A DNA stretch of 63,940 nucleotides, the filler included, from Octopus bimaculoides (lineage: Eukaryota): NCBI RefSeq assembly GCF_001194135.2. It is 4 parts of 4 records of this genome, joined end to end, with 100 filler letters (N's around TTAATTAATTAA, not from the genome) between each part and the next. Parts side by side here need not be neighbours in the genome. Positions count along the whole stretch, not along the records: positions 31,386 to 44,440 come from NC_069004.1; 3 more parts are not named here. One strand, 5' to 3'. This document shows positions 22,153 to 49,663 of this stretch, in pieces. The stretch's first letter is position 1, and the number at the start of each line of letters is the position of its first letter. The notes beneath the pieces were generated by a model. The model worked only from the letters and a program-made list of their open reading frames with translations, had not been told where the DNA came from and did not search any database. Both the position numbers and the translations under genes were made by a program.

Positions 22153-23342
22153 NNNNNNNNNNNNNNNNNNNNNNNNNNNNNNNNNNNNNNNNNNNNNNNN
22201 NNNNNNNNNNNNNNNNNNNNNNNNNNNNNNNNNNNNNNNNNNNNNNNNNNNNNNNNNNNNNNNNNNNNNNNNNNNNNNNNNNNNNNNNNNNNNNNNNNNN
22301 NNNNNNNNNNNNNNNNNNNNNNNNNNNNNNNNNNNNNNNNNNNNNNNNNNNNNNNNNNNNNNNNNNNNNNNNNNNNNNNNNNNNNNNNNNNNNNNNNNNN
22401 NNNNNNNNNNNNNNNNNNNNNNNNNNNNNNNNNNNNNNNNNNNNNNNNNNNNNNNNNNNNNNNNNNNNNNNNNNNNNNNNNNNNNNNNNNNNNNNNNNNN
22501 NNNNNNNNNNNNNNNNNNNNNNNNNNNNNNNNNNNNNNNNNNNNNNNNNNNNNNNNNNNNNNNNNNNNNNNNNNNNNNNNNNNNNNNNNNNNNNNNNNNN
22601 NNNNNNNNNNNNNNNNNNNNNNNNNNNNNNNNNNNNNNNNNNNNNNNNNNNNNNNNNNNNNNNNNNNNNNNNNNNNNNNNNNNNNNNNNNNNNNNNNNNN
22701 NNNNNNNNNNNNNNNNNNNNNNNNNNNNNNNNNNNNNNNNNNNNNNNNNNNNNNNNNNNNNNNNNNNNNNNNNNNNNNNNNNNNNNNNNNNNNNNNNNNN
22801 NNNNNNNNNNNNNNNNNNNNNNNNNNNNNNNNNNNNNNNNNNNNNNNNNNNNNNNNNNNNNNNNNNNNNNNNNNNNNNNNNNNNNNNNNNNNNNNNNNNN
22901 NNNNNNNNNNNNNNNNNNNNNNNNNNNNNNNNNNNNNNNNNNNNNNNNNNNNNNNNNNNNNNNNNNNNNNNNNNNNNNNNNNNNNNNNNNNNNNNNNNNN
23001 NNNNNNNNNNNNNNNNNNNNNNNNNNTAGGTGAGCCCTTCCTCTATCATTTCTTTACTCCTCTTCACCCCTTTGTAAACTGTCTTCCTCTTTTCTCTATT
23101 CTACTTGCATCTTTCCACCTCCCCCCCCCATACACTCACCATTCCTTCAGTGTTCTGCTTTGTTATAACCAGAAATGGCTCTGACAAAAGTAGCATTATT
23201 AAGTTGTTCAATTTTTCTCAATTGATCAATAGACCAATTGAGTAAACATATCAGTAATGTACCTATAATGACCACTGGAAACAGCTGTAAGCCAAATTTG
23301 CTCCAGTAAAGAAAAAATATGCAATGACCATTATTTTTAGCA

Positions 23343-29130: not shown

Positions 29131-29632
29131 CATGACATACACACATACACACACACATATATATATAATATGTGTGCATTAATAACAATTTAAGGGTGAT
29201 CAAGTCAACACATCCAATCCAGTTATGTTAGATGTGCTAATTATTATTCATTACAAATACTGCTGCTGTCACTAATAACTAATTTATTAATAGCCTCCCA
29301 GCTTTTTGCAATATCACTGGCTGTTTGGTCATTATCATACTATATCAGTTTGACTGATTTTCCATCTAGCATTCAGTGCAAAGCTGATCTGTCACTGAAG
29401 ATCCACAGTAAATGGTGAATTCACGTGATACAGTTGTGCCATCCACCACTGCAGACGTTAATTTCATCAGCTGATATAGTTAGTGCTTAAGAGCATGTGT
29501 TGTCAACATGAGGTTGTATCTCTGGACATTAATAGCAGCTTAAAGGTGATATAGTTGACACATCCAGTTATGTTGGATGTGCTAATTATTATCTATTACA
29601 ATTACTGCTTCTGTTGCTAATAGCTAATTGGT

Positions 29633-31385: not shown

Positions 31386-31417
<32 letters not shown>

Positions 31418-31971
31418 CATAGTTCAAATTTACAGGAAACATGAGTCGTCGAAGAGAGGTGAGGGAACAACAAGCAGGTGTATTAGTTTGACGTTCGGAA
31501 AGAATAGAAATATATATTCTTCAATTAGTTTTTGCTGTTATATTGGCGTAAAGAGTGAGATGAAATCTCCTTCATATGAAATAATATATTCATACGGAGT
31601 TTCTTTCTATCTAGCAACGTACAACATGATCTGCCTTTTCGTTTGTCGCAGTTTTGGAAGCTCAAACCACTTTTCTATCAGTGTATCAGTTTGTCTCACA
31701 TCCTAACCCCATGCCTTCACCTCCCCACCACACACATGCGCGCACAGTTTCTTGAATATTTGTATATCTGTTGTCTCAAACTTCTGCTATCTAGCACCTT
31801 CGGATGACCTCTATTCAACCGCTACACAACTGCTACTCGACTGCTACTCAACACTCCTACCACGGCCAGACTACCTCTATTTATATGTTTTGGGAAATCC
31901 TACTTCTTCGCCTGGGGGCGTCGACACAACAATATCTTACTGTCTATTGCCTGTTTATCGTGAATATATGC

Positions 31972-32052
<81 letters not shown>

Positions 32053-32292
32053 TGTGTGTGTGTGTGTGTGTGGTTTGTGTGTGTGCGTGCATATTTATAT
32101 ATATATAGATATATGTTTAAAATACTTGATATATATTCACATATATATATCTTTAAATGTATATTCTGTCTCTCTCGCTCTCTTTCACTTTCTCTCTCTC
32201 TCTCTCTTTCTTTCTATTTTATGTGTAGGTGTATTTAAATACTTTCTTAAGTGCACACACGCACATAGAGACAGGCAGACAGACAAACAAAC

Positions 32293-32293
<1 letters not shown>

Positions 32294-32360
<67 letters not shown>
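32294..32360. repeat. (GATA)n microsatellite
   Basis: Direct inspection. Confidence 0.95.
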
Positions 32361-32361
<1 letters not shown>

Positions 32362-33089
32362 TCTCGTATGCTCTTCCAACAACGCTAACAAACTTCCTGT
32401 CTATTTCATGCGTACCCACAGTCAACTATTACATTGGTTTAACACGTATGAACATTCAAAATGCGTTGTATTCACAACACAAACAGTTTTCCTTCACGTG
32501 CTATACAGCCACTTTCTCAAGGTTGACTTGGACTGTAAGTCTGAATCCCGCATATTCTGATATAGCAAAACTTTGTCTTTCGCAACAGCACAGAACCAAC
32601 GTTGAAATCAAAGTGAAATGTAAATGAAAATGTAAATTGTTTATTCCGTCATAAGATATCTTTGTCTCAACCAATTCATGATTCATATATTTCTACTGAC
32701 TTAAGACTTCATATTTGTTCAAAAACTACAAGACAATCAGTTTTCAATAATTTGAACGTCGGTTATATCTTTCATTATATACATTATACGATCTGAAACT
32801 ATATAACCTTCATACATGAAACATATGTATACCACATATGCATGATATTGCAATGCTCTGTTTTGTCACTCTCACTTCTCCTCATCCCTCTTTATACATC
32901 ACGCATCAGCTAATATCTCACATTTTACAAAACTAGCTTTAGGCCATCCATCCACACCATGCATCGTCCAGCTACGAGAAACCTTTGCTTCCGGTTTTAA
33001 GCTTTGTCATGAGTATGCTTCTAAACCAGTTCCATATCTAGCAGCCCTTATTTCCTAGTTGTTGACCTGATGGTATCCTGTAGTTGTAG

Positions 33090-33196
33090 GTTACTCAACC
33101 CGGCTCTTTCTATTACCAATATTTTCATGACCCTAAAGTAGCGTCTCTGCAACTTGCTTATGGTTCTCAAGAACCTTCAGTTATTTTCCCAAAGTT
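33090..33196 (+). CDS. Possible upstream exon of gene A (VTQPGSFYYQYFHDPKVASLQLAYGSQEPSVIFPK)
   Basis: Acceptor gttgtAG and strong donor GTAAGT; phase 0 to phase 2, compatible with the phase-2 exon at 36015. No homology support. Confidence 0.2.
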
Positions 33197-34092
33197 GTAA
33201 GTATAATTCAGCATCAGAGTGTGGTAAATGTATTTAGAGGGCGTCAAGTAAAACAAACAGTTCTTGAGATCATCAACTTTGACGGTTGAGGGGAAATCCA
33301 TTGAAACAGAAAATGAATAACAAAGTTACTTCAAACAAGTATGATTGTTTGATTGTATTTCTTTCATTATAATTATTCATACATAGAAATATATACATAC
33401 TCCTATACACATAAGTACATTTAAAATTTACAAACTTACGGAAACTTATACACGTATATATATAAATAAAACAAATCCAGTGGTCTGTATGGTATGCCTA
33501 CAAGAAATGAAAACTGCAATTTTGTTTTTTTTTGTTGTTTTTTTTGTTAATAAAAGATATTTAGCAAATAACATTTTGTATTTCTCATATGTGCATAATC
33601 TGCACGGTTTCCCATCATGAAGTCAAGCTACTGATGTGATCTTCAGCTAGTATGCTAAAGTGTGCATAAGTGAAATTAGCTATACACAAATGAAATTATC
33701 TATCACATGTTTCCTGAACATGATATCGTCGGTAGATTTTTGAACTATTTTCTCTAAACAAAAGTTTCAGTTAACCTATATATTTTTAAAGAATGGTTAA
33801 TATGTTCTCCGTGAGCTGTTAGCGCATTTACAATTGAAAGGCGCCTTAGCCTCGCAATGCTGTGGGCCACTATTTCGAGAATTGATTACTTTTGAAGACG
33901 GTATTGTTTGTGCCAGATCGAGTGTGGTGGAGTACAACATTTTCGTCCTACATCTATTAAAAATATATTTGCTCTTCTAGGAGAAAACCGATGACAAAAT
34001 TGCAGCTTATATTGTTCACGTGAATTCTTCGGAGTTCGTAGTCAACAATCAGCATTTAATGTGTTTTATAAAATCAATAATGCAAGATGAAC

Positions 34093-34155
<63 letters not shown>

Positions 34156-34240
34156 TTACATATACGTATNNNNNNNNNNNNNNNNNNNNNNNNNNNNNNN
34201 NNNNNNNNNNNNNNNNNNNNNNNNNNNNNNNNNNNNNNNN

Positions 34241-34298
<58 letters not shown>

Positions 34299-34789
34299 TG
34301 TATGTATGTATGTATGTATGTATGTATGTATGTATATAAGAACCGAGTTCAAAATAATGGTCAATATATATAATTCTTTCAATAGAGTTAATTTGGTTTA
34401 CAGTTGTTTCCAGTTGTCATTATAGCTACAGTAGTAATAGGTTTACTTAAGTGAGTAAACCTATCAGTAATGTACCTATAATGACCACTGGAAGTAGCAG
34501 TAAGCTAAATTTGCACTATTAAAGGAATTATGAGTAATGGCAACAATTTAAACTTGTTTCATATATATCACTCTGAAAAGCCAGTTTGTCTGGAGCCCCC
34601 CACCCCCGGATTTACAATATAGAAATTTTTGATGAACCATAACTGGAGACCCTACCAAAAGATTACTTGGCGGTCTTCACTAATCTAAGTAATATTGTTA
34701 GCCTGGTGTGCCAACAGAGTGCTTATGAAGTATTTTTATCCCGGATTGATAATCGCTTGTTATTTTTTTACACAATCACACACACACAT

Positions 34790-34845
<56 letters not shown>

Positions 34846-36014
34846 ACACTCTCTTTACTCTTTTACTCTTTNNNNNNNNNNNNNNNNNNNNNNNNNNNNN
34901 NNNNNNNNNNNNNNNNNNNNNNNNNNNNNNNNNNNNNNNNNNNNNNNNNNNNNNNNNNNNNNNNNNNNNNNNNNNNNNNNNNNNNNNNNNNNNNNNNNNN
35001 NNNNNNNNNNNNNNNNNNNNNNNNNNNNNNNNNNNNNNNNNNNNNNNNNNNNNNNNNNNNNNNNNNNNNNNNNNNNNNNNNNNNNNNNNNNNNNNNNNNN
35101 NNNNNNNNNNNNNNNNNNNNNNNNNNNNNNNNNNNNNNNNNNNNNNNNNNNNNNNNNNNNNNNNNNNNNNNNNNNNNNNNNNNNNNNNNNNNNNNNNNNN
35201 NNNNNNNNNNNNNNNNNNNNNNNNNNNNNNNNNNNNNNNNNNNNNNNNNNNNNNNNNNNNNNNNNNNNNNNNNNNNNNNNNNNNNNNNNNNNNNNNNNNN
35301 NNNNNNNNNNNNNNNNNNNNNNNNNNNNNNNNNNNNNNNNNNNNNNNNNNNNNNNNNNNNNNNNNNNNNNNNNNNNNNNNNNNNNNNNNNNNNNNNNNNN
35401 NNNNNNNNNNNNNNNNNNNNNNNNNNNNNNNNNNNNNNNNNNNNNNNNNNNNNNNNNNNNNNNNNNNNNNNNNNNNNNNNNNNNNNNNNNNNNNNNNNNN
35501 NNNNNNNNNNNNNNNNNNNNNNNNNNNNNNNNNNNNNNNNNNNNNNNNNNNNNNNNNNNNNNNNNNNNNNNNNNNNNNNNNNNNNNNNNNNNNNNNNNNN
35601 NNNNNNNNNNNNNNNNNNNNNNNNNNNNNNNNNNNNNNNNNNNNNNNNNNNNNNNNNNNNNNNNNNNNNNNNNNNNNNNNNNNNNNNNNNNNNNNNNNNN
35701 NNNNNNNNNNNNNNNNNNNNNNNNNNNNNNNNNNNNNNNNNNNNNNNNNNNNNNNNNNNNNNNNNNNNNNNNNNNNNNNNNNNNNNNNNNNNNNATATAT
35801 ACGTGTGTGTGTACGTACGCACCCAAATCTCGTTTCTCTCAATCGATCTCTATACATTTATCTACCTATCCATCTATATCATCTGTGCATCCACTACATA
35901 TCCATCTATTTATATCTCTCTTACCCGTCCGACTTTTTATTATATGTCGACCAGTTGCTAATCTCTTTGACTACATATCTAACTCACAACCTCTCGGGAA
36001 TTTCTTTCCATCAG

Positions 36015-36330
36015 ATCTGCATCAAACAACCAGAGTGCAGCTTGCTGTGAAATCACTAGTTATCATAGCGAACTTTTAAGTGCTTCTACACGGACTGGTC
36101 AGAGTGTGACAATTCATAAAACAAATGACTTAGTACAACGAATGTTCATAAAGTATTGTAGCGCGGTATCTGTGAATAAGGCCTGCAAATACATAAGAAA
36201 TGGCCTGTCGTCCAAGTGTGTACAACTACACATACAGCAACATGCTATCGTAAAGCTAAGTGGTGATCCAAAGATGTACTATACATTCATTGAAGTTCCA
36301 TCAGGCTGTGACTGCCAAGTAGTCCAATGA
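36015..36330 (+). CDS. Terminal coding exon of a secreted Spaetzle/neurotrophin-like cystine-knot protein (copy A, intact)
   Basis: Acceptor tttctttccatcAG ends at 36014. After a phase-2 base the frame is open for 104 aa: SASNNQSAACCEITSYHSELLSASTRTGQSVTIHKTNDLVQRMFIKYCSAVSVNKACKYIRNGLSSKCVQLHIQQHAIVKLSGDPKMYYTFIEVPSGCDCQVVQ*. Cys spacing is CC-x36-C-x8-C-x10-C-x29-CxC. The A..G..V.I..Q..C..C..S.C.Q..F..VPSGCxC pattern matches the Spaetzle/NGF-type knot. A paralogous exon lies at 40762 and AATAAA follows at 36383. Confidence 0.85.
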
Positions 36331-36382
36331 ATTTTTATCTTTAACTGCAGTTATACTATTGTCGAACACGTTTATAAATTAC

Positions 36383-36388
36383 AATAAA
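36383..36388 (+). terminator. Probable polyadenylation signal of cystine-knot gene A
   Basis: AATAAA 53 nt after the stop codon; conserved in the paralog at 41123-41128. Confidence 0.5.
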
Positions 36389-36574
36389 ATATATCAAATT
36401 TCTGCCATTTCGTTTTATAGTAAATGTACTTGATTTATTGTCTGTTATGTATTCATTTAGTTATTTTACATTTTTGATTTATGCGACTGCTTCGGCTATC
36501 AATGACCTCTAATTTTTCAACGGTGTGTCTCTGCCAGCACATATTTGAGTGTGATACACACACACGCGTGCGCT

Positions 36575-36606
<32 letters not shown>

Positions 36607-37448
36607 AACAAACATACATACACACAAACGCATATACACACACGCACACAGGTTATCAAGTAAGATTATGACGTTTACATCTTTTAACAAGATGGCTGAG
36701 ATATTACATGAGTATGGCTAATAACAACGAAGGAAGTAATAAGCTGTGTCCATAATCACTTCCAGCTGTTTCGAGAATAGATGCGCAAATGAAGCGTTTT
36801 ACGCAAAACAAACGGTGGCTAGCAATATAGCACTGATCTGTTTCATTATCTGAGGTAGAATGTCATATAACAACAATATATTCCATCGTTGGAGGGAGAA
36901 TGAGAGAGCCGTAGTAGATAACATTGGCTTGCAGCTAATCGGCTGAATAGAAGATTTAAATAATAAGAGGCAGAGAAAATGTGGTCATTCTAAAAGGAGG
37001 ATAGATAGAAACTAACAATCATATCAATAGATAGAGATATACTCATTTCAAATGTGGTTATTCCCCTCTATATAAAGAGGGGAAAGCCAGTGTCACTATG
37101 GGAAAGGTGAGAGGATACTAATTGATCTGGTGAGAAGAAAGTCATGTCTAAATGGCGAGGGCCAATGAGCCAAAAATAGCAGAGTAATCAATTATCAAGG
37201 TTGATGAATAACACATATCAACCATCTACATCAGTTTGATATAGCGTTTAGCGCGATCTGGTGTCACAGATATTTTATGTCGTTGAAACATTTTAGACGT
37301 TCAATGGACTACATTTAGAGTTGTAATATAAGTTAAATAGGTATAAGAGTAAGTCTATTCTATGTGGATCAGACTTGTGCTAAAAGATTCAAATTCCTGC
37401 GATTATATTTGTTATAAAGTCGGAGTGTTGTAAATCATCCATGGACAC

Positions 37449-37453
37449 ATGTG
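37449..37453 (+). CDS. Candidate first coding micro-exon (ATG TG|gtaaac) of gene B
   Basis: Phase-2 donor that joins 37847 to give M-W-I-P-G. A TATAAA lies at 37413-37418. The splice is inferred only. Confidence 0.3.
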
Positions 37454-37846
37454 GTAAACCCTTCATTTTGTCTGTTAAATTAGTGTAGAGGATTATGTAA
37501 AAAGATTTGTTTACAACCTTTTAAGCATAAACACCATGGGACATTTTCGCCCTGCTATGGAACATCGGAGTATACGATATCCCCAGTAATATTATATGAG
37601 ACACTGGCTTTTTTAAAGGTTAAGAGTGCAGTTACCTAGTGAGGTACATTTATTGTACTTATAAGATATAAAGGAGCTGAGGTGAACTAAATACCGGTAA
37701 TTAAAATTAACTGTGGGTCCAATATGAATATTGATTAAATTTTGTTGTATGTTAAGGATGCTACACTCCTAAACATTAAATCTTGTGCATTTGCCTTGTA
37801 ATGGACACTTATTACGTATTTTACAGTTGCAGCCTTTCTTTTTTAG

Positions 37847-37898
37847 GATTCCTGGCATTGTGCTATTAGTGTTATTACTAGGATATCTAGCTTCTCAA
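37847..37898 (+). CDS. Candidate signal-peptide exon of gene B (IPGIVLLVLLLGYLASQ)
   Basis: Acceptor tttcttttttAG and donor GTAATG, running phase 2 to phase 0; encodes a hydrophobic core typical of a signal peptide. Confidence 0.5.
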
Positions 37899-38053
37899 GT
37901 AATGTCTATTTCGAGAGAGACATTACTAATGAGGTATCTAACAAGGATAAGGCTTTATTTACGAAGATAAGAGAAATAGAGGCATAGTTATGAAATAGAT
38001 ACATAGTATTGAAATTTCAGGATGAGATATTCTTGTTATTGAAATGAATCCAG

Positions 38054-38203
38054 GCTTTAAGACACTTGTACCAAACCAGAGGTAATGGGTCTAATCCTGC
38101 CCAGAATGATTCTACTAATCAAGTTGAGGGCAGATCTAGTAGGGATGATGATCCGAATCGATGGTTTAAAATTCAAATCCGATTTGTCATCCTTAAGTTT
38201 GAA
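38054..38203 (+). CDS. Candidate pro-domain exon of gene B (ALRHLYQTRGNGSNPAQNDSTNQVEGRSSRDDDPNR...)
   Basis: Phase-0 acceptor (atgaatccAG) compatible with the preceding exon. The frame is open and polar, with NGS/NDS sequons and an RSSR (RxxR) site. The 3' donor is ambiguous (near 38081, 38163 or 38203). Confidence 0.35.
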
Positions 38204-39122
38204 GTGAGAAGATTTAGTAGCACACGGCTCCGTTCGATTATTCACTTCCAGCTTCCTGATTTGTTCTCATTATTGGTGATTAATCATATCCAAGGCAGAT
38301 ACAAAAGATTTAAGTAGTTCCTTGCAAATGAAGATCAAATATTCTTCAACATTAATAGTGTATAAAATATCGGTGTTACCAGAAAAACGTGCACATTAGG
38401 TAATCTTGTGATTAGGCATACGCTTGCAAGTTATTTTTTGTAGGCAGAAGATTATGAAATTAAATATGAAATTAACGCGCTTAATATTTGAAACCTCAGC
38501 TTAAAACTATTCCAGTACAGGGGTATTAGGAGTACATATTGTCGTATTTTACTGTCATGCATGTTTGTGCAGTGCGTGTGAGTGTCTCTGTGTATGTGCA
38601 TCTGCAAGATGTCATGCAGTGGGTCTGAACCCGGAACCATGTAGCTAGGTAGCAAACTTCTTACCACACAGCCATGGCTGCACCAATAGTTATATTGATA
38701 TGTATACATATACTTTTAGGTTTTTCAGTTACTTTGCAACTGTGAGAAATTTTATTCAAGATTTATTTTGTTGCATATTTTTCTTAGTAACTCAGTCTCA
38801 TCTACAATATATGTTTCATAAGTAAACACACAAGTGCACATCCTCCCACACAAATACACACATATTCGCGCATACAGCCATACACAGTGACACACACATA
38901 TGTATACACATACTCACACATACATGTGCGTGTGTGTGTATGAGTGTATGTATTTAAATGCATATATATATATAAATACACATTTATATTTGTTAATATG
39001 CAAATACATACACACGCACACACACGCACACACACGCACACACACAGAGGTAGAAAGTATGAAGGGGACTAAAAGACAGGGTAAAAGAGTCGTACAAAAT
39101 TTAAATACATACTTACTATAAG

Positions 39123-39563
39123 GTGAGCACAAGTGTGTACGTGCGCCGCTATATGCATATATATAGATATAAATGATGGAGCAAAAATGCAATAGAGGAC
39201 AATAAAACATTCCGACAGATAGACGAAACAAAGGCGGACAAGAAAAACAACAATTAGAAGGACAGAGGGGAAAAAAGGACAGGTCATTTGTGGCCCTCTT
39301 TCTTCAGTCAAGTTACTGCATGTCCTTACAGTTTCGGGCAGTTACACATGAGGCTGTTCGATCTGGTTGCCCCCCAAAATGTCTAAGCTAAGAGCATTAG
39401 ATTTTTTGTAAGAAAGCTAGCGAATGTGTAGGGCAACAAAGACAAAAAACGGAGAACATGGTACACAATGACCTGTCCAATTTCCCTGTCCTTATAACTG
39501 TTTTTATTCCATTTTTTATATTTATATATACATATAGTGCTATACGTACACACTTGTGCTCAC
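39123..39563. mobile_element. MITE-like inverted-repeat element
   Basis: Perfect 18-bp terminal IR gtgagcacaagtgtgtac (39123-39140 / 39546-39563) plus imperfect internal IR. Confidence 0.45.
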
Positions 39564-39596
39564 GTTATATATACATACATACATACACACACACAC

Positions 39597-39629
<33 letters not shown>

Positions 39630-40003
39630 CATATATGAGTATGCAATTTATACGAAAGATCCAGGGGAATATTTACAAGGTGGCTGAATGTTGTTTAAGT
39701 GTCCTAGGAAACAATGCTCACACTTGTGTGTGATTTGATTCCGTGATAAGTAAGTTGTATTTAAGAGAAAATAGGACAAATTGAAAATGGAGACAAACGC
39801 TCAGGATGGTATTAAAAGATTTATGTCTTCATATCTTCTACATATGTTTCGATGGATGCATTCAAAATACTTCCGACAGGAACAATCATCGTCAGCTAAG
39901 CATCAATTTATATATATATATATATATATNNNNNNNNNNNNNNNNNNNNNNNNNNNNNNNNNNNNNNNNNNNNNNNNNNNNNNNNNNNNACATGCATGCA
40001 CAC

Positions 40004-40048
<45 letters not shown>

Positions 40049-40559
40049 AGAGAAATTACAATAATCAAAACATTATATCATTTGTTCCCTATGTACATTT
40101 GTATCACGTGATCAAGATGGGAAGGATGACTTCCCTTTGCAAATACAGGCAGGACACAGATGTGTGTCAATAGCCAGCAGTAGGAGATGTTCTCCTGGGG
40201 CTAAAAGCAACAGTAACATTCACCCTTAGGGTTTAGCCGCATTTAAGTGGCAAATATACTTCACGTTGTCGTGCAGTTGCTATTTATACCTCGTTCAATT
40301 TAGCTTTTAAGGTTTTCACGAAATGTAATGCTCCTTATCAATTTGCCCTCAAAGTAAAATTTTTTCCTGAAACATCGCGGGCAATTTTGGGAGATTTTAT
40401 ATTTTTATAATTTTAAATGTAGACCACCGCACCTACAACACGGATTTGGTCGTGACTTCTTTTCTGTTTTGTTCTTATTTGTTACCGGTCAACACTCTTG
40501 AATCTGAGAGCAATCTTTCTCTTCAGTTTTCTTTGGCACATGCCCACACATATAAGTAT

Positions 40560-41975
40560 GTCTCTGTGTGTGCGCGCGCCAAAATCGCGTAATTTATATC
40601 GATCTCTATACATTTACTTATCTATCCACCTATGTGTCCATCCATCACATATCCATCTCTTTCTCTCACCTGCCTGTCCGACCTTTTATTACATGACTCT
40701 TCGACTATATATATCTAATCTCTTTTACTGCATATCTAACTCACAATCTCTCGGGAATCAGATATGCATCATACAACCAAAGTGAAATCATTAGTTATTT
40801 AAGCAAACTTGTAAGTGCTACTTCACAGAATGGTCAGGATGTGAGAATTCATGAGACAAAATCAATAATTCAATGCTTCTTCATGAAATATTGTGGCTCA
40901 ATATCTGCGAATAAACCCTGAAAATACATACGAAATAAGCCTGACGTCCCAGTGTGTACAACAACGCATATTTCACCATGCTATCGTAAACGTAGGGTAT
41001 GATTCAAAGCCATACTATCGTTTCATTTCGGTACCATCAGGTTGTGACTGTCAAGTAGTCAGCTGAATTTTTATCTTTGTTTAACTGTAAAAATACTACT
41101 GTTGGATTCGTTTATAAACTACAATAAAATATATCAAATTTCTATTATTTCGTTTTACTGTCAATGCAATTAATTTGTCTGTTGTGTTGAGTTTTCAACA
41201 GTATGTCTCGCCAGCACATATTTCAGTGCGATACACACAATTAATCCACACACAAAAGCACACACACAGATTATCAGATTAGATTATGACATTTACATCT
41301 TTTAACAAGATGCCTGAGATATTAGATGAATATGGATAATAACAACGAAGGAAGTAATAAGGTGTGCGGATAATCACTTACAGCTGTTTCAAGAATAAAT
41401 GCGCAGATGTGGCGTCATACGCTAAACAAACAGGGGCTAGCAATATAGTAGTGATTTATTACATTATTGGAGGAAGAATGCCATATAACAACGATATACT
41501 CCATTGTCGGAGGCAGAATGAGGGAGAGCCTTGTTAGATAACTTTGGTTTCTTGCTGATGCGGTGTACAGAGGAAGGTTTAAATAATAACAGGCAGAGAA
41601 AAATAAGATCATGCCAATAGGAGGATAGATAGAAACTAATCATCATATCAGTGGATAGATATATAAATTGTAAGACTTAAAGGAAGATATATAGAGGGGA
41701 ATGGGCAGTGTCGATATGGGAATGGTGAGAGGATGCTAAGTGATCTGGTGAGAAGAAAATCGTGCATAAATGGTGAGAGTGAGGGGACAAAAACAATAGA
41801 GTTATCAGTTAGCAAGGCTGGCCACCGGATGTGAGGTTGCTGTATAAGATGAAGAATATGTATTATCAACATTAGTTTGACATAGCATTCAGCGCTATCT
41901 GTGTGGGAGGGGAAAGGTTATGTTAAGTATATGGGTTGAATATTAAAATATTGAGAACGTATTTTGTGGTTGAAA
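40560..41975 (+). repeat. Tandem segmental duplication, unit B
   Basis: Colinear homology with 35800-37290, for example the shared gaaggaagtaataag and tgatctggtgagaaga blocks. Confidence 0.85.
40762..41066 (+). pseudogene. Disabled paralog (copy B) of the cystine-knot exon
   Basis: Manual alignment gives about 58/100 identical aa to copy A: YASYNQS----EIISYLSKLVSATSQNGQDVRIHETKSIIQCFFMKYCGSISANKP*KYIRN/SLTSQCVQQRIFHHAIVNVGYDSKPYYRFISVPSGCDCQVVS*. Lesions: a 12-bp deletion removing AACC, TGC>TGA at 40919-40921, a +1 frameshift near 40937, and loss of the 10-nt acceptor pyrimidine tract. Confidence 0.85.
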
Positions 41976-44393
41976 TCGTAATCTCCTGTATCGCAAACAT
42001 AGGAATGGGAAAAAAATTAGGAAAAAAAATAAGGAGGCGCGGAAATGTCACCTCCGATATGTTAGAAAGAAGAGATAAAGGACAGGATTTCTGGGAAAAC
42101 TTCTTTTTAAGTTTATATCGAAGATCAGGATTTTAAATATGCTCATCATAAATACAAATTACACATAAGAAAAAGATCATTTCAATCGGATTTGAGCTGT
42201 AAATATACGCGTGCACACTGCAAGAAATTGAAATAACACCCATATTATCAATTCCACAGAATAAGAGAATACCGGAGAACATGATAAGAGGGATGAGTCT
42301 GTGAAACACGTTTAAGTTGTTATGTCGAACACAAATGAGAATATCATGATTTTCATGGGGATGGCTACTTCAGTAGATGTGGGCTCATTAAAACAGCGTA
42401 AAATGTTATTTACTATAGTTTGCTATAGACGTAAAGAACGCAGAAACGCACTCATAGAATTGATAATATTAAAAACACCAAAATGTACACATACGAAGGT
42501 CAAATGAAACGAAATGTAGTCAATATAGGTGCAAAACATACTTTCTGTAGCAGAGTTATGCTATAAAAAGATGGAAAGTCACCATTATAGTAAAAGACGC
42601 TATGCGTGATCAATGTAACAAAGTACAAAAAGCCAACATTTATTTGAAACATGTACTAAATGTTATAAAATTCACGACTGAATATCACGGTGAAGAAAGT
42701 GAAAGTCCAAGAAAATTCAGAAGGCATAATTAAATTTTTCATACAAAAATAATATATTTACAATTTTGAAACAAAAGATGAATCAAGTGTATAGGAAGAA
42801 AGATGCTGTTGTAACGTTAATTTAAAATATTTGCTGAAGGATGTATGTAGCAAGATATAAATTAATTTGACATTATTACATATTTTTAACTGTGTAACGT
42901 TATAAGCTGTAGAATAAATACTGACTAACACAGTAAAAAGGTTGTGTGGCGTTGATACTCAGAGTGATGAAGAAGCTTGGGAGGACTGTTAAATATTATC
43001 TTGAAACTGGTTAGAAGGAGTGGAATAACATTTCTGTAATTATATTGAAAGAGCCGCTGAGTCTTTCTACTTCGCCAAGTTACCGAATTTATTGTAATAA
43101 CCAGAATAACATTTTTTTGTAGATATATTTGCGAGTATTGTGAGTGGTGTTAAATCAGCCAAATTTTCAAGTTGCTAGTACTTCAAAGTGGACGCTGTTG
43201 TTCGTTTAAAGTTCAGGCCGCAACCTAAACTTTCAATATCAGCGCGTTTCACTGTTGGGCGGGAGTAAGTTACTTACATAAACTAAGACAAACACACATA
43301 CATTAACGCACACTTGAAGCCTACTTCTGTCCCTGTGTGTGTCGATCGTCACAAAAATGTATATATACTGACCGACATACATCGTCACACACATATACTT
43401 GTCAGCCATCGGCCTAACGTAGGTAACGAACGCGCGAACACTCTCATATAGAAAATGTAACGTTATTGTCGTTGTGGTGGTGATATAAAATGTCGTTTAC
43501 GATAGGTGACTAAAAGAAAAATGACAATGCTAAATTTTTGTAACGCAAATGTGTGAATGAAAATATAGTTTAATTGGTAGATAGAAGCCTACTGAATCTT
43601 TTGATACCCCATACGTCAAAATCGGTAACTCGGTTTTGGAATGCATAAGGAACGTACGCATACACACACATTCATACGAACTCCCTTTTATATATATATG
43701 ATAGTAAATTTCATGAAGGGAATGAATATGATTTGTAGTTAGTGTAAAAGAAGTATACGAATGAAAAAAGAAAGTTCTTAAATCTTGTAACTTAGAAGAC
43801 AATATTCAGAGTAGAAAGTAAAATACGTGGTCGATAGAGAATAATATTTAGTTAAACGTTTGCAATGTAATTCCAATCAGAATGCATAGGGAAATTAAGA
43901 ATTATGGAATATGGAATCGTACAGAATTCAAGCATGTAGTAAATTTAGAATGGGGAAAATAATGTATTAGGGCTTTGTTTCGAAAAATAGGGGATGCGCT
44001 TTGTTTAAGGCTTAGTGAAAAAATACATTTTATGTAGGCAGCTCGACGCAATATTTTACCGTATAGGCAAAATCTGGTCATCACTAATTGTGACTGTATG
44101 TGCTACAAGCAGTCATCTAGCTTGTCAGTATATATTTATTTATATATGCATATCTACTTTTGTGTGTGTTTCTCTCAGAATATATGTGTATATGAATATA
44201 TCGAAATGTATATGTGTGTGCATCTATGTGTGTATATGTATGCATTTATCTATGTATCTCCATGTATATATGTGCACATGTATGTGAGTGTATATGTGTA
44301 AATGTCTGCTTGGTTGTCTTTTTGTGTGCACGCGTGTGTGTGCCTGTCCCTTTCTATCACCCCTTCTCACTCTTTCTCTCTCTGTACATGCAA

Positions 44394-44440
<47 letters not shown>

Positions 44441-45500: not shown

Positions 45501-47451
45501 NNNNNNNNNNNNNNNNNNNNNNNNNNNNNNNNNNNNNNNNNNNNNNNNNNNNNNNNNNNNNNNNNNNNNNNNNNNNNNNNNNNNNNNNNNNNNNNNNNNN
45601 NNNNNNNNNNNNNNNNNNNNNNNNNNNNNNNNNNNNNNNNNNNNNNNNNNNNNNNNNNNNNNNNNNNNNNNNNNNNNNNNNNNNNNNNNNNNNNNNNNNN
45701 NNNNNNNNNNNNNNNNNNNNNNNNNNNNNNNNNNNNNNNNNNNNNNNNNNNNNNNNNNNNNNNNNNNNNNNNNNNNNNNNNNNNNNNNNNNNNNNNNNNN
45801 NNNNNNNNNNNNNNNNNNNNNNNNNNNNNNNNNNNNNNNNNNNNNNNNNNNNNNNNNNNNNNNNNNNNNNNNNNNNNNNNNNNNNNNNNNNNNNNNNNNN
45901 NNNNNNNNNNNNNNNNNNNNNNNNNNNNNNNNNNNNNNNNNNNNNNNNNNNNNNNNNNNNNNNNNNNNNNNNNNNNNNNNNNNNNNNNNNNNNNNNNNNN
46001 NNNNNNNNNNNNNNNNNNNNNNNNNNNNNNNNNNNNNNNNNNNNNNNNNNNNNNNNNNNNNNNNNNNNNNNNNNNNNNNNNNNNNNNNNNNNNNNNNNNN
46101 NNNNNNNNNNNNNNNNNNNNNNNNNNNNNNNNNNNNNNNNNNNNNNNNNNNNNNNNNNNNNNNNNNNNNNNNNNNNNNNNNNNNNNNNNNNNNNNNNNNN
46201 NNNNNNNNNNNNNNNNNNNNNNNNNNNNNNNNNNNNNNNNNNNNNNNNNNNTTCATATATATATATATATATATATATTTATACACACACAAATACATAT
46301 ATACACACAAACATACATATATGATTGTGCATGTATGTGAATGTGCGCTTGCGAGTTTGAGTGCGTGAGGGTTTGTGCGTGTGTGTGCGAATGTGTGTGT
46401 GTGCGTGTGTGCGTGTGTGTGTGTGCGTGTTTGTGTGTGTGTGAGTGTTGTATGCAAATGTGAATAAACAGATGATCAAATGAATTGAGAAACTTTCGTA
46501 CATCAAAAGGACAGCAACAAGAGGAAAAAGAACACCCAGCTATTATACTGGAAATTTTCAATGTATGCGCACACACACACTCTTACACATACTAACACAC
46601 ACATATTTATACACCCTCACACACGCAAACACATATATATATATTTATATATATACATACATGCTTATATATATAAATACACAAACACACACACACACAT
46701 ACACACACATATATATATATACGTAGGTACGTAGGTTCTCATAATTGCTTCTCGTTCCCACGCCTTTAGCCTTAAGAGGTGTATTGTTTAAGAACGCCAA
46801 TTGAAATTGAAACCGACACTTCGCAGTTACCTTCACCCACAATCACATCCCACTTCGTACTTTTCATACAAGCTACCATCGTTTGGCGGACATCAGTTGT
46901 GAATGACTTAGAAACTGTGACCGCTAACACCACCACCACNNNNNNNNNNNNNNNNNNNNNNNNNNNNNNNNNNNNNNNNNNNNNNNNNNNNNNNNNNNNN
47001 NNNNNNNNNNNNNNNNNNNNNNNNNNNNNNNNNNNNNNNNNNNNNNNNNNNNNNNNNNNNNNNNNNNNNNNNNNNNNNNNNNNNNNNNNNNNNNNNNNNN
47101 NNNNNNNNNNNNNNNNNNNNNNNNNNNNNNNNNNNNNNNNNNNNNNNNNNNNNNNNNNNNNNNNNNNNNNNNNNNNNNNNNNNNNNNNNNNNNNNNNNNN
47201 NNNNNNNNNNNNNNNNNNNNNNNNNNNNNNNNNNNNNNNNNNNNNNNNNNNNNNNNNNNNNNNNNNNNNNNNNNNNNNNNNNNNNNNNNNNNNNNNNNNN
47301 NNNNNNNNNNNNNNNNNNNNNNNNNNNNNNNNNNNNNNNNNNNNNNACCACCACCACCACCATCCCCGCCGCCGCCACTATAAATAGTGGTGCATTTATA
47401 AGTAATACAAATATCTTGAAATTGGTCTCAAATCGTCTACTTGGTATTTTA

Positions 47452-47935: not shown

Positions 47936-49663
47936 TTCTTTTAAAACTTCACTTATTCACACACGATTCTGTTGAATCAAGCCGCAACCCTTGCGCCATT
48001 TACGTCCATCGCTCCGAACCAACAAACACCATCTTACCAACCGACAAGCCAACCAACCGACCAAACCATCTCTCCGGTATCAGACCCACCCGATCGCATG
48101 GGTTTTCGTCTTTAAACCTTTCTTATTCAATAAATTGTTTCTGGGTCTCCCTTAACACACACACACACACACACACACACTCCTCAACAATAACAGCAAT
48201 AACATGCACAAGGAGTAGTACGAGGCGATGAAAAAACGACTACGCCGACGGTGCTGGCGGCGTCGGGGGCGGCGGTGGTAACAACACATTGTTATCATCC
48301 CTGCCCTCTTGTAACACATGTAAACTACTTCAGCACCTGGGGGTAGGTCGAGGTAGAATAAAAATTCGCCGCAGGGATTCTTCCAGGGGTATATTGTACA
48401 TAAAGAGCCGCTGGATAATACAGAATGAGAAGCGGAGGAGAACGATATATATATATACATACATATATANNNNNNNNNNNNNNNNNNNNNNNNNNNNNNN
48501 NNNNNNNNNNNNNNNNNNNNNNNNNNNNNNNNNNNNNNNNNNNNNNNNNNNNNNNNNNNNNNNNNNNNNNNNNNNNNNNNNNNNNNNNNNNNNNNNNNNN
48601 NNNNNNNNNNNNNNNNNNNNNNNNNNNNNNNNNNNNNNNNNNNNNNNNNNNNNNNNNNNNNNNNNNNTATATATATATATATGTATATATATATATGTAT
48701 GTATGTATGTATGTATATATGTATGTATGTATGTTGTGAGTGAGTTTGTGTATATGTGTGTGTATACAGAAAAGAAAGAACTTGATAAGTAGGGGTGGAT
48801 TGAGGGTGCTTTGTATGGGGTGGTTGTGTATGTGGGCAGATGTGTGTGCGTATGTGCGCGTGCGTGCGTATGTGTGTCGGGAGGAGTTTTTTTTATCATT
48901 TCTCATGAATGAGAACCTATGTGTTTTAGTGTTTGTGCATGCTTCTCTCTCACCCCCTCTCTCTGTCTCTCTCGCTATCCCTCTCTGTGTCTATGTGTGC
49001 GTGTGTGCGTGTGTGTGCGCGTGTGTGTATAAAAGTAGCGTTTTGTTGAATGTTTGAGAATCTGGAAACGTAGATTTTGGTTCGCAGCGTCGTAAAACTT
49101 TCAGCCCAATGGAATATCAACAAGAGTTAATGTATGTTTATGTATGTATTCTCATGCATATAGTCGCATATCTAGATATGCTCATATATATTTAAATGCT
49201 AAACTTCAGGAAAGTTTTACAGATTTTTACAGTTCCATTGATGGATTAGAGCTGTGGTTATCGAATTCGCTTTCTCCTTTCTGATTTTGTATATATGTAT
49301 ATATGTATGTACGTACGTATGCATGAGTATATGCTTGTTTGTATGTATGTATGTATGTATGTATGTATGTATGTATGTATGTATGTATGTATGTATGTAT
49401 GTATGTGTGTATTTGCATATGTGTTCATGCATAGAATCCTTGTTCGCTTATGTTAATATTCTGAATGCTTAATAAACAGGTTTATAAGGCTGCTACGTAG
49501 TGGTTCATCAGACAGGAGCGATGAAATTTCCTAGACTTATTTATTTGATCTACATATTCGGCTAAAACTCACGAAAGGAATATCGTGGTATGGCTGCATT
49601 CCAATGACTACGATTAGTCATTTAGATATATGCATACATACATACATAGACACATATATATGT

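What the first reader, a model, noticed from the sequence alone, without database searches (positions are those of the whole stretch)
36015..36330. Intact Spaetzle/neurotrophin-type cystine-knot ligand in a cephalopod-like genome
Seen: an exon with a clean acceptor, a 104-aa open frame, a stop and a poly(A) signal. The ORF track misses its first 30 aa, including the CC pair. Established: the C...C-x8-C-x10-C-Q...PSxCxC layout characterises Spaetzle (the Toll ligand) and the related neurotrophin/coagulogen knot. It differs from IL-17 (no RSxSPW) and from TGF-beta and PDGF spacing. Inference: this is a divergent, probably lineage-specific secreted signalling or immune ligand. Spaetzle-like ligands are poorly characterised outside arthropods, so this locus is the best candidate here for an undescribed system.
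Basis: partly seen in the sequence, partly recalled or inferred. Interest (0 to 1): 0.8.

Follow-up and report, generated by a model that had tools for sequence, protein, structure and literature searches.

The report
Octopus neurotrophin/Spätzle-type ligand, alternative last exon
The exon is real: it encodes a complete secreted growth-factor-like protein of the nerve-growth-factor/Spätzle type in Octopus bimaculoides, and it is one of four interchangeable last exons (plus one dead copy) that share a single secretion leader, so one gene can apparently make several different ligands.

Summary
Window 36015-36330 (+) has a Py-tract/AG acceptor, a 104-codon frame, a TGA stop and AATAAA 53 nt downstream.

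The peptide passes Pfam's Spaetzle threshold (35.2 bits, cutoff 27). An alignment-based AlphaFold model (pLDDT 90.5) matches NGF, NT-3, NT-4 and BDNF (TM 0.72-0.81). Spätzle and coagulogen come next. IL-17, PDGF and TGF-beta do not match.

The piece is Octopus bimaculoides chromosome CM046624.1. The exon is the last exon of RefSeq LOC106880251 isoform X3, named "uncharacterized".

New here is the gene layout. One set of 5' exons (signal peptide, short pro-region) ends in a split Arg codon that completes a Lys-Arg site. Five tandem knot-exon units follow it:
- A, B (this finding), E and D are intact.
- C (window 40762-41066) is dead.

RefSeq models join the leader to A, B or D.

The knots belong to a conserved protostome family (molluscs, chelicerates, ants) with an N-terminal CC doublet, intermediate between neurotrophins and Spätzle. 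B is the most divergent copy.

The receptor (Trk/p75-type or Toll) and the expression of B could not be tested. This is a known kind of ligand in an unusual multi-ligand gene. Interest is moderate.

The parts
36001..36014 (+). 3' splice site of the terminal exon: polypyrimidine tract tttctttcc plus atcAG
   Evidence: Read directly. The same Py-tract + cag|AT acceptor stands before the three other intact knot exons. Ten bases of the tract are deleted in the dead copy C.
36015..36330 (+). Terminal coding exon 'B' of LOC106880251 isoform X3. Its first base completes the Arg of a Lys-Arg processing site. It then encodes the 104-aa mature cystine-knot domain and the TGA stop (36328-36330).
   Evidence: Translation. 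Pfam PF16077 Spaetzle 35.2 bits, E 2e-8. 100% identical to residues 69-172 of XP_052832272.1. AlphaFold pLDDT 90.5. Foldseek top hits NGF/NT-3/NT-4/BDNF, TM 0.72-0.81.
36043..36048 (+). TGC TGT: the CC doublet. The second Cys aligns with knot Cys I. The first is the extra, seventh cysteine.
   Evidence: Invariant in all 8 relatives and at least 90% conserved in 54 family members. Alignment with BDNF and Spz1C.
36331..36388 (+). 3' UTR up to and including the poly(A) signal AATAAA (36383-36388)
   Evidence: The block acaATAAAatatatcaa is conserved behind all five knot-exon units.
35806..37203 (+). Duplication unit B: intron tail, exon, 3' UTR and about 0.8 kb downstream. The left edge is cut by the assembly gap 34872-35794.
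   Evidence: blastn of B against C: 74-78% identity over 658 + 598 bp plus a 49-bp piece at about 90% (L003 coordinates + 6853). MAFFT alignment.
40565..41820 (+). Duplication unit C, the sister of unit B
40762..41066 (+). Pseudo-exon C, a dead copy of the knot exon. A 10-nt deletion removes most of the polypyrimidine tract. A 12-nt deletion removes the CC pair. The codon matching Cys57 of B (the fourth cysteine, knot Cys III) is now TGA (40919-40921). A 1-nt insertion near 40937 shifts the frame. A relic AATAAA stands at 41123.
   Evidence: tblastn. DNA alignment. Coordinates and three-frame translation.

Best explanation
Window 36015-36330 is one of four intact, mutually exclusive last exons of the Octopus bimaculoides gene LOC106880251.

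Gene layout (shown from sequence):
- Three shared 5' exons lie 16-19 kb upstream, outside the window. They encode a hydrophobic signal peptide and a roughly 50-aa pro-region ending ...HLRNIK(R).
- The last Arg codon is split AG|A across the intron. Splicing to any knot exon therefore rebuilds a Lys-Arg site exactly at the start of the mature domain.
- Each knot exon carries its own stop and poly(A) signal.

Likely mechanism (inferred):
- Exon choice, coupled to alternative polyadenylation, decides which of four different about 104-109-aa cystine-knot ligands (A, B, E, D) is made from one promoter and one secretion leader.
- The precursor is secreted. A proprotein convertase cleaves after Lys-Arg.
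- The knot folds like NGF/Spätzle and dimerises. The dimer is probably covalent, through the extra cysteine of the CC doublet.
- The dimer acts as an extracellular ligand. I consider a neurotrophin-type receptor (Trk/p75NTR-like) slightly more likely than a Toll receptor, but nothing here decides this.

Origin (shown by sequence comparison):
- The array arose by tandem duplication of the ancestral single last exon, after the octopus lineage separated from the other molluscs sampled here.
- B is the fastest-evolving intact copy, and its sister C has already decayed.
For: Identity of the domain:
- Pfam Spaetzle is above threshold for B, A, D and E, at 33-39 bits.
- A profile of the relatives hits Aedes Spz1C at 8e-10, BDNF/NGF/NT-3 at about 1e-6 and Drosophila Spätzle at 7e-5.
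- The AlphaFold model has pLDDT 90.5.
- In Foldseek the 35 best hits are neurotrophins (TM 0.72-0.81), followed by Spätzle, Spz1C and coagulogen.

Gene model:
- XP_052832272.1 (X3) is the 68-aa leader plus B. X1 (P0061) is the same leader plus A. X2 (P0062) is the same leader plus D.
- All three are called from one start at the same locus.

Architecture:
- The leader exons occur only once in 56.7 kb.
- All four intact knot exons have a Py-tract, a cag|AT phase-2 acceptor matching the exon-3 donor AG|gt, and a conserved AATAAA.
- No leader copy lies in the 4.4 kb between B and C, which is contiguous apart from 60 N.
- The frame upstream of B is closed.
- The dead copy has also lost its Py-tract.

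Ancestral state: oyster and Lottia orthologues have a single knot-encoding last exon, with the intron a few codons before the basic site.

Family:
- An HMM built from 52 non-octopus members scores A 108, E 92, D 89 and B 51.5 bits.
- The octopus copies are monophyletic, with 73.5% bootstrap.
- All seven cysteines are invariant.
Against: - No transcript data could be examined. Use of exon B rests on a RefSeq (Gnomon) model, and exon E is in no RefSeq isoform.
- Assembly gaps lie between the units (window 34872-35794 is only 220 bp upstream of B). They could in principle hide small unit-specific exons.
- B matches only 5 of the 17 near-invariant family residues (plus the sequence).
- dN/dS is 0.84 between B and dead C, and 0.6-0.75 between B and its intact paralogues, against 0.36 for A-E. 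B may therefore be under relaxed constraint.
- The cleavage site is K-R with Asn at P4, which is not a canonical furin R-x-[KR]-R site.
- Dimerisation, processing and receptor are inferred, not shown.
Confidence: 0.72

Rival explanations
1. Exon B is a decaying or already non-functional copy. The open frame survives only because too little time has passed, and isoform X3 is a prediction or a low-level splicing by-product.
For: B is the most divergent copy: 51.5 bits against the family HMM, versus 89-108 for its paralogues. It has the longest branch in the tree. It has replaced 12 of 17 near-invariant family residues. dN/dS is 0.84 against C and 0.6-0.75 against the others. Its closest relative C is dead. 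No independent protein record for B exists beyond the RefSeq model.
Against: B keeps all seven cysteines with exact family spacing, the invariant Q41 and Q70, an intact Py-tract/AG acceptor and its AATAAA. Over the same period C acquired a nonsense codon, a frameshift and two deletions. Pfam still scores B above threshold, and the model folds confidently. Fast evolution is also what a diversifying ligand would show.
Confidence: 0.18
2. The five knot exons belong to separate tandem genes. Their own leader exons are hidden in assembly gaps or are too divergent to detect, and the shared-leader isoforms are an annotation artefact.
For: N-runs lie between the units: L003 23288-24532, 27317-27387, 28019-28941, 37588-38929, 43601-43876 and 45710-46186. 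The 2015-era records for D and E are single-exon fragments. Tandem whole-gene duplicates of this family exist in a spider, as adjacent Oedothorax loci.
Against: The leader spans about 3.1 kb in three exons. No gap between units exceeds about 1.3 kb. No second leader copy is detectable by tblastn or blastn in 56.7 kb. The B-C interval is essentially gap-free and has none. The B-C duplication unit starts only a few hundred bp upstream of the exon. Every acceptor has the phase required by exon 3. RefSeq gives three isoforms from one start.
Confidence: 0.08
3. The mature protein is a true Spätzle, that is, a Toll-receptor ligand acting in immunity or development, rather than a Trk/p75-type neurotrophin.
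For: Pfam Spaetzle passes threshold while NGF does not. The best solved-structure sequence hit is the Toll5A ligand Aedes Spz1C. The Cys I-II and II-III spacings (36, 8) equal those of Spz1C, not BDNF (44, 9). B has the Spätzle-like Pro in PSGCDC. Octopus has TLRs and MyD88 (PMC4199593 listed; PMC10279657).
Against: The modelled fold is much closer to neurotrophins than to Spätzle. The wider family HMM scores BDNF at 39 bits, above Spz1C at 26.6 and another arthropod Spätzle at about 25. Family members from Lottia and a tick also pass the NGF threshold. The family motif C-R-[FY]-[IV]-D...S-x-C resembles the neurotrophin signature (alignment). The interchain Cys of Spätzle (PSCCxC) is absent. 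The pro-region ends in a convertase-type dibasic site, as in neurotrophins. Wilson 2009 (PMC2772990) found neurotrophin-like but no Spz genes in lophotrochozoans. Cephalopods have the smallest mollusc TLR repertoires.
Confidence: 0.35

Closest known systems
Protostome neurotrophin-like / 'Spaetzle domain-containing' small cystine-knot proteins, e.g. Lottia LOTGIDRAFT_157400, Crassostrea virginica LOC111131014 and Dermacentor and Limulus homologues. These are probably the protostome neurotrophins of Wilson 2009, PMC2772990.
   Same: Same domain, with seven cysteines at the same spacing (CC-x36-C-x8-C-x10/12-C-x29/30-C-x-C). Same prepro layout, with a basic site shortly before the CC. The knot is encoded by the last exon, with an intron just upstream.
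   Different: Oyster and Lottia have one knot exon. Octopus has five tandem units behind one leader. The octopus copies, B above all, have lost much of the otherwise strongly conserved CCP...PLGG...LYRD...YTYxYA...R.DY signature. That the Wilson 2009 sequences are this same family is inferred from taxon distribution and was not checked sequence by sequence.
Vertebrate neurotrophins (NGF, BDNF, NT-3, NT-4; Pfam PF00243)
   Same: Best structural match (TM 0.72-0.81). Six knot cysteines. Secreted pro-protein cleaved at a basic site. The mollusc precedent ApNT/ApTrk is cited in PMC3966541.
   Different: B does not reach the Pfam NGF threshold and fails the PROSITE neurotrophin signature. It has an extra N-terminal cysteine, whereas neurotrophins are non-covalent dimers (established knowledge). 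Its pro-region is much shorter. Vertebrate precursors are encoded in one exon (PMC2772990).
Arthropod Spätzle (Toll ligand; Pfam PF16077; PDB 3E07, 7B1C)
   Same: Passes the Pfam gathering score. The best PDB sequence hit is Aedes Spz1C. Cys I-II-III spacing is similar. There are seven cysteines. B has a Pro before Cys V.
   Different: The seventh Cys is beside Cys I, not beside Cys V (PSGCDC against PSCCKC). The pro-region is short and ends in K-R. Structural similarity to Spätzle is lower than to neurotrophins. No evidence for a clip-protease cascade or Toll binding.
Alternative-last-exon peptide-hormone genes such as calcitonin/CGRP (CALCA) or arthropod CHH/ITP (own knowledge)
   Same: A shared signal peptide and N-terminal pro-region is joined, by alternative 3' exon choice with alternative polyadenylation, to different mature bioactive peptides.
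   Different: Here the alternatives are four paralogous, tandemly duplicated copies of a whole cystine-knot growth-factor domain, not unrelated peptides. Usage is inferred from gene models only.

Membership tests
Spaetzle (Pfam PF16077) | Profile HMM score at or above the curated gathering score (27 bits) over the full domain | tested here: met
   35.2 bits for the exon peptide (profile 3-96 of 96). 33.4 bits for the full isoform X3. Paralogues score 36.5-39 bits.
Spaetzle (Pfam PF16077) | Six knot cysteines plus an extra Cys adjacent to Cys V (PSCCxC) that makes the interchain disulfide in Spz1/Spz2-type proteins (PMC2772990) | tested here: not met
   The six knot cysteines are present. The C-terminal motif is PSGCDC, so no Cys is adjacent to Cys V. 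The extra Cys is the first of the N-terminal CC.
Spaetzle (Pfam PF16077) | Binds and activates a Toll receptor after cleavage by a clip-domain protease cascade | not testable with these tools
   No receptor or protease data. The cleavage site is a K-R dibasic site rebuilt at the splice junction.
Neurotrophin / NGF family (Pfam PF00243, PROSITE NGF signature) | Pfam NGF profile score at or above the gathering score (27 bits) | tested here: not met
   No NGF hit was reported for B even at E <= 10. Paralogues D and E score 21.3 and 24.1 bits. Lottia (34.5) and the tick (30.5) family members do pass.
Neurotrophin / NGF family (Pfam PF00243, PROSITE NGF signature) | Signature [GSRE]-C-[KRL]-G-[LIVT]-[DE]-x(3)-[YW]-x-S-x-C between Cys III and Cys IV (quoted in PMC2772990) | tested here: not met
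   The regex matches BDNF only. B has A-C-K-Y-I-R-N-G-L-S-S-K-C, one residue shorter. The wider family has a similar C-R-[FY]-[IV]-D...S-x-C.
Neurotrophin / NGF family (Pfam PF00243, PROSITE NGF signature) | NGF-type cystine-knot fold (elongated beta-hairpin pairs) | tested here: met
   The model has pLDDT 90.5 and is all-beta. The 35 best Foldseek PDB hits are NGF/NT-3/NT-4/BDNF, with E from 2.5e-6 to 2.8e-4 and TM 0.72-0.81. This rests on a predicted model, not a solved structure.
Neurotrophin / NGF family (Pfam PF00243, PROSITE NGF signature) | Signals through Trk and/or p75NTR receptors | not testable with these tools
   No receptor data. Protein-database searches were exhausted before octopus Trk/p75 could be looked for.
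Protostome CC-type neurotrophin/Spätzle-like family (unnamed; molluscs, chelicerates, ants) | Significant score against an HMM built only from non-octopus members | tested here: met
   B scores 51.5 bits (E 3e-17), A 108, E 92 and D 89. BDNF scores 39 and Spz1C 26.6 on the same model.
Protostome CC-type neurotrophin/Spätzle-like family (unnamed; molluscs, chelicerates, ants) | CC doublet plus five further cysteines at family spacing, and invariant Q41/Q70 | tested here: met
Protostome CC-type neurotrophin/Spätzle-like family (unnamed; molluscs, chelicerates, ants) | Near-invariant (at least 90%) residues P12, P20, G22, G23, L33, R35, F43, Y44, S66, Y74, Y76, A77, V79, R88, D90 | tested here: not met
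   Of these 15, B keeps only S66, A77 and V79 (with the CC pair, 5 of the 17 near-invariant columns). Several of the other changes are conservative: I33, K35, F44 (columns read against the sequence). B is a divergent member.
IL-17 / PDGF / TGF-beta cystine-knot cytokines | Profile or fold match | tested here: not met
   No Pfam hit. Foldseek E is 0.49 (IL-17A), 0.40 (PDGF-B) and 0.34-0.58 (AMH, TGF-beta2), with TM below 0.45.
PTTH / Trunk (Torso ligands) | Sequence similarity to a solved PTTH chain | tested here: inconclusive
   No chain named prothoracicotropic hormone appears among the 22 PDB matches at E <= 10 or in the Foldseek rows listed (the 50 best of 372 matches at E <= 10). That a PTTH structure is in the PDB is from my own knowledge. 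Trunk itself was not compared.

The most novel reading that the evidence does not exclude
The array is a ligand-diversity device. Individual octopus cell types, for example neurons, would choose among four knot exons behind one promoter and leader. The conserved extra cysteine would allow covalent homo- and heterodimers, giving up to ten distinct neurotrophin/Spätzle-type ligands from one gene. This would be a secreted-ligand counterpart of the clustered, variable-exon protocadherins that are expanded in octopus. The fast-evolving exon B would be a neofunctionalised ligand with altered receptor specificity.
Probability: 0.2. Interest if true: 0.75.

Novelty: new variant of a known kind. Interest (0 to 1): 0.5.

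Why it matters
- Ligands of the neurotrophin/Spätzle superfamily are barely characterised in lophotrochozoans. A 2020 paper states that a Spätzle homologue had been described outside arthropods only in one clam (PMC7773633). Wilson 2009 found no Spz genes in lophotrochozoans.
- Whether octopus has an NGF-like factor was posed as a question years ago. The attempt recounted in PMC8814914 stayed unpublished, and I found no paper describing one.
- This locus gives concrete candidates: a single octopus gene that appears to encode four alternative NGF/Spätzle-like ligands. It also offers a clean natural experiment, with conserved copies, a fast-evolving copy and a dead copy.
- It makes two questions directly testable: which receptor class (Trk/p75 or Toll) such protostome ligands use, and whether alternative last exons are used to diversify growth-factor signalling in a large invertebrate brain.
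- The protein family itself is known and the gene is already modelled in RefSeq, so the advance is moderate, not categorical.

Tried and rejected
- Single-sequence AlphaFold gave an unusable model (pLDDT 35). It was replaced by an alignment-based run.
- Single-sequence phmmer against the PDB gave only marginal hits (Spz1C E 0.77). The profile search was needed.
- The first word-indexed protein search found only the RefSeq model itself.
- Exact look-ups of P0002, P0003 and P0032 found no contig. L003 was reached through P0062 instead.
- Kassabov et al. 2013 (ApNT) is not held. I therefore could not check whether ApNT belongs to the CC family or compare its splice variants.
- IL-17, PDGF and TGF-beta were rejected on Pfam and fold grounds. 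PTTH/Trunk found no support.
- Rfam found nothing in the piece.
- No other ORF of substance lies on either strand of the piece. Long 'ORFs' are N-runs or microsatellite translations.
- The idea that the knot exons have private leader exons was tested by tblastn and blastn and not supported.
- dN/dS among the older paralogues is of limited value, because dS is about 0.85-1.2 and near saturation.
- The neighbour-joining tree has modest support (73.5% for octopus monophyly). The octopus clade's position outside the other molluscs is probably a long-branch effect.
Full report
**1. Observation**

- A polypyrimidine tract and AG (tttctttccatcag, 36001-36014) precede an exon that starts at 36015.
- From 36016 the frame runs 104 codons: SASNNQSAACCEITSYHSELLSASTRTGQSVTIHKTNDLVQRMFIKYCSAVSVNKACKYIRNGLSSKCVQLHIQQHAIVKLSGDPKMYYTFIEVPSGCDCQVVQ. 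It ends at TGA 36328-36330.
- AATAAA lies at 36383-36388.
- The mechanical ORF list begins at GTG 36106 (74 aa). It therefore misses the first 30 residues and the CC pair.
- The frame is closed 12 codons upstream of the acceptor, with no ATG. The peptide cannot be a stand-alone protein.
- The opposite strand holds only ORFs of 39 aa or fewer here.
- The rest of the piece (31386-44440) has no other substantial ORF, no Rfam match, several microsatellites and three N-runs.

**2. What the peptide is**

- Pfam gives a single hit, Spaetzle PF16077: 35.2 bits against a gathering score of 27, E 2e-8, covering profile positions 3-96 of 96.
- HMMER against 1.84 billion representative proteins found eight relatives. 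All share CC...C-x8-C-x10/12-C-x-Q...G-C-x-C.
- A profile of these relatives matches solved structures as follows:
  - Aedes aegypti Spz1C, the Toll5A ligand, at 8e-10;
  - BDNF, NGF and NT-3 at about 1e-6;
  - Drosophila Spätzle C-106 at 7e-5.
- AlphaFold without an alignment failed (pLDDT 35). With a 54-sequence alignment it gave a confident all-beta model (pLDDT 90.5).
- Foldseek against the PDB returns 35 neurotrophin chains first (E from 2.5e-6 to 2.8e-4, TM 0.72-0.81). Spätzle, Spz1C and coagulogen follow. IL-17A, PDGF-B, AMH and TGF-beta2 are insignificant (E > 0.3).
The rejection of IL-17, PDGF and TGF-beta is upheld.

**3. Where it comes from and the gene around it**

The peptide is 100% identical to residues 69-172 of XP_052832272.1, "uncharacterized protein LOC106880251 isoform X3", from Octopus bimaculoides chromosome CM046624.1. 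The window piece equals L003 coordinates plus 6853.

The full protein begins with MLLVKLFCLLLAASCCHS, a hydrophobic signal-peptide-like N-terminus with Kyte-Doolittle value about 2.5. A short pro-region ending HLRNIKR follows, then the knot.

The leader is encoded by three exons at L003 10001-10024, 10837-10928 and 13000-13087. The last ends ...ATA AAA AG|gtagaa. The A at window 36015 completes the Arg codon, so the splice junction coincides with the Lys-Arg site.

Two other RefSeq isoforms start at the same ATG and carry the same 68-residue leader with different knots. X1 (P0061) uses an exon ending at L003 22473. X2 (P0062) uses one ending at 46756.

tblastn over the 56.7-kb locus shows exactly one copy of the leader and five knot-exon units:

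| Unit | L003 coordinates | Status |
|---|---|---|
| A | 22143-22473 | intact, isoform X1 |
| B | 29162-29477 | intact, this finding, isoform X3 |
| C | 33909-34213 | pseudo-exon |
| E | 41670-42000 | intact, present only as an old ORF record (P0003), in no RefSeq isoform |
| D | 46426-46756 | intact, isoform X2 |

- Each intact unit has a Py-tract, a cag|AT phase-2 acceptor and a conserved acaATAAAatat block 50-75 nt after its stop.
- Sensitive blastn finds no second copy of the leader exons.

**4. The dead copy inside the window**

Unit C lies at window 40565-41820, with its exon equivalent at 40762-41066. It is the closest relative of B, at 74-78% DNA identity over at least 1.4 kb that includes intron tail and downstream sequence. 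It carries four lesions:
- a 10-nt deletion in the Py-tract;
- a 12-nt deletion that removes the CC pair;
- TGA (40919-40921) at the codon matching Cys57 of B (the fourth cysteine, knot Cys III);
- a 1-nt insertion near 40937.

That the dead copy also lost its splice signal is consistent with these exons depending on splicing to the shared leader.

**5. The family**

A second, alignment-based database search found 55 proteins. They come from bivalves, gastropods, a chiton, ticks, horseshoe crabs, a spider and two ants.
- Most are 130-190 aa. Nearly all are precomputed as hitting both PF00243 (NGF) and PF16077 (Spaetzle).
- All are named "uncharacterized", "Spaetzle domain-containing" or "NGF-related domain-containing".
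- In my own scan the two Pfam models score them similarly. Lottia scores NGF 34.5 and Spaetzle 33.7. The tick scores 30.5 and 34.7. The octopus copies pass only Spaetzle.

An HMM built from 52 non-octopus members scores as follows:

| Sequence | Bits |
|---|---|
| Octopus A | 108 |
| Octopus E | 92 |
| Octopus D | 89 |
| Octopus B | 51.5 |
| Human BDNF | 39 |
| Aedes Spz1C | 26.6 |
| Other arthropod Spätzle (two domains of P0007) | 26.2 and 24.7 |

- The octopus knots are therefore members of this family, and B is the outlier.
- Cysteine spacing is CC-x36-C-x8-C-x10-C-x29-C-x-C. The first two intervals equal those of Spz1C. BDNF has 44, 9, 11 and 28.
- The extra, seventh cysteine is the first of the CC doublet, next to Cys I. 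In Spätzle it is next to Cys V.
- The family thus sits between the two named families.
- Its taxon range (ticks and Lottia, not flies) matches the "protostome neurotrophins" of Wilson 2009. That paper also reported no Spz genes in lophotrochozoans (PMC2772990). I could not verify the identity sequence by sequence.

**6. Evolution**

- In oyster and Lottia the orthologue has one knot-encoding last exon, with an intron a few codons upstream of the basic site. The octopus array is therefore a tandem multiplication of the ancestral last exon.
- The four octopus knots are monophyletic in a neighbour-joining tree (73.5% bootstrap), and B has the longest branch.
- Nei-Gojobori dN/dS is 0.36 for A-E, 0.55-0.75 for the other intact pairs and 0.84 for B against the dead C.
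- B keeps all seven invariant columns but only 5 of 17 near-invariant ones. It is either under relaxed constraint or diversifying.

**7. Mechanism proposed**

- Shown by sequence: the leader, the junction-encoded K-R site, the knot, and a private stop and poly(A) signal for each unit.
- Supported by gene models only: mutually exclusive use of A, B or D with the common leader.
- Inferred: secretion, convertase cleavage after K-R, dimerisation through the spare cysteine, and receptor binding.

On the receptor I lean slightly to a neurotrophin-type (Trk/p75NTR-like) receptor, for four reasons:
- the fold ranking;
- the family HMM ranking;
- the dibasic processing site;
- the Aplysia ApNT-ApTrk precedent cited in PMC3966541.

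A Toll receptor remains a serious rival. The points in its favour are the Pfam ranking, Spz1C as the best PDB sequence hit, the Spz-like spacing and the Pro in PSGCDC.

**8. Novelty and limits**

- The protein belongs to a known superfamily, and the locus is already modelled in RefSeq. UniProt labels the D exon product a Spaetzle domain-containing protein.
- I found no paper on an octopus Spätzle or neurotrophin.
- Published statements stress how little is known of such ligands outside arthropods. They also recall an old, unpublished search for an octopus NGF.
- What seems new is the arrangement: one leader, four alternative whole-ligand last exons and one decayed copy.
- The main weakness is that no transcript evidence could be inspected, and the assembly has gaps between units.

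Noticed in passing
window 40762-41066 (unit 40565-41820): A pseudogenised sister copy of the finding's exon. It has lost the Py-tract and the CC pair, and carries an in-frame TGA where B has Cys57 (the fourth cysteine, knot Cys III), plus a frameshift. It keeps a relic stop and AATAAA (41123).
   Followed up: yes
L003 41670-42000 (outside the window; window-equivalent 48523-48853): A fourth intact knot exon (E) with a good acceptor and poly(A) signal. It is in no RefSeq isoform and is known only as a 134-aa MetaClust ORF (P0003) that reads through from the intron.
   Followed up: partly
window 34170-34240, 34872-35794, 39930-39989: Assembly gaps (N-runs). The 923-N gap ends only 220 bp upstream of the exon. 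This truncates the visible intron and the left edge of duplication unit B.
   Followed up: partly
window 31991-32089, 32293-32361, 34096-34142, 34241-34335, 34777-34843, 36575-36650, 44394-44440: Dense di- and tetranucleotide microsatellites, (TG)n, (CA)n, (AGAT)n and (TATG)n, flank the gaps and the exon. A (CA)38 run starts 245 bp after the stop. They produce the long spurious 'ORFs' in the six-frame list.
   Followed up: no
window 36298-36318 (codons for EVPSGCD): B, and dead C, have Pro-Ser-Gly before Cys V, recalling the Spätzle PSCCxC motif. All other family members examined have K-[SA]-G-C. This is either convergence or a retained ancestral state.
   Followed up: no
L003 47657-47995 (outside the window): An ORF downstream of the last knot exon contains a motif that looks like a retroelement reverse transcriptase (…LDYKGAFHSVPHSW…). 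It was not checked against Pfam.
   Followed up: no
Protein family, not in the window: The CC-type family is strongly conserved between molluscs and chelicerates. Among insects it appears in the hit list only for two ants (Camponotus, Harpegnathos). The spider Oedothorax has at least three copies, two of them adjacent.
   Followed up: no
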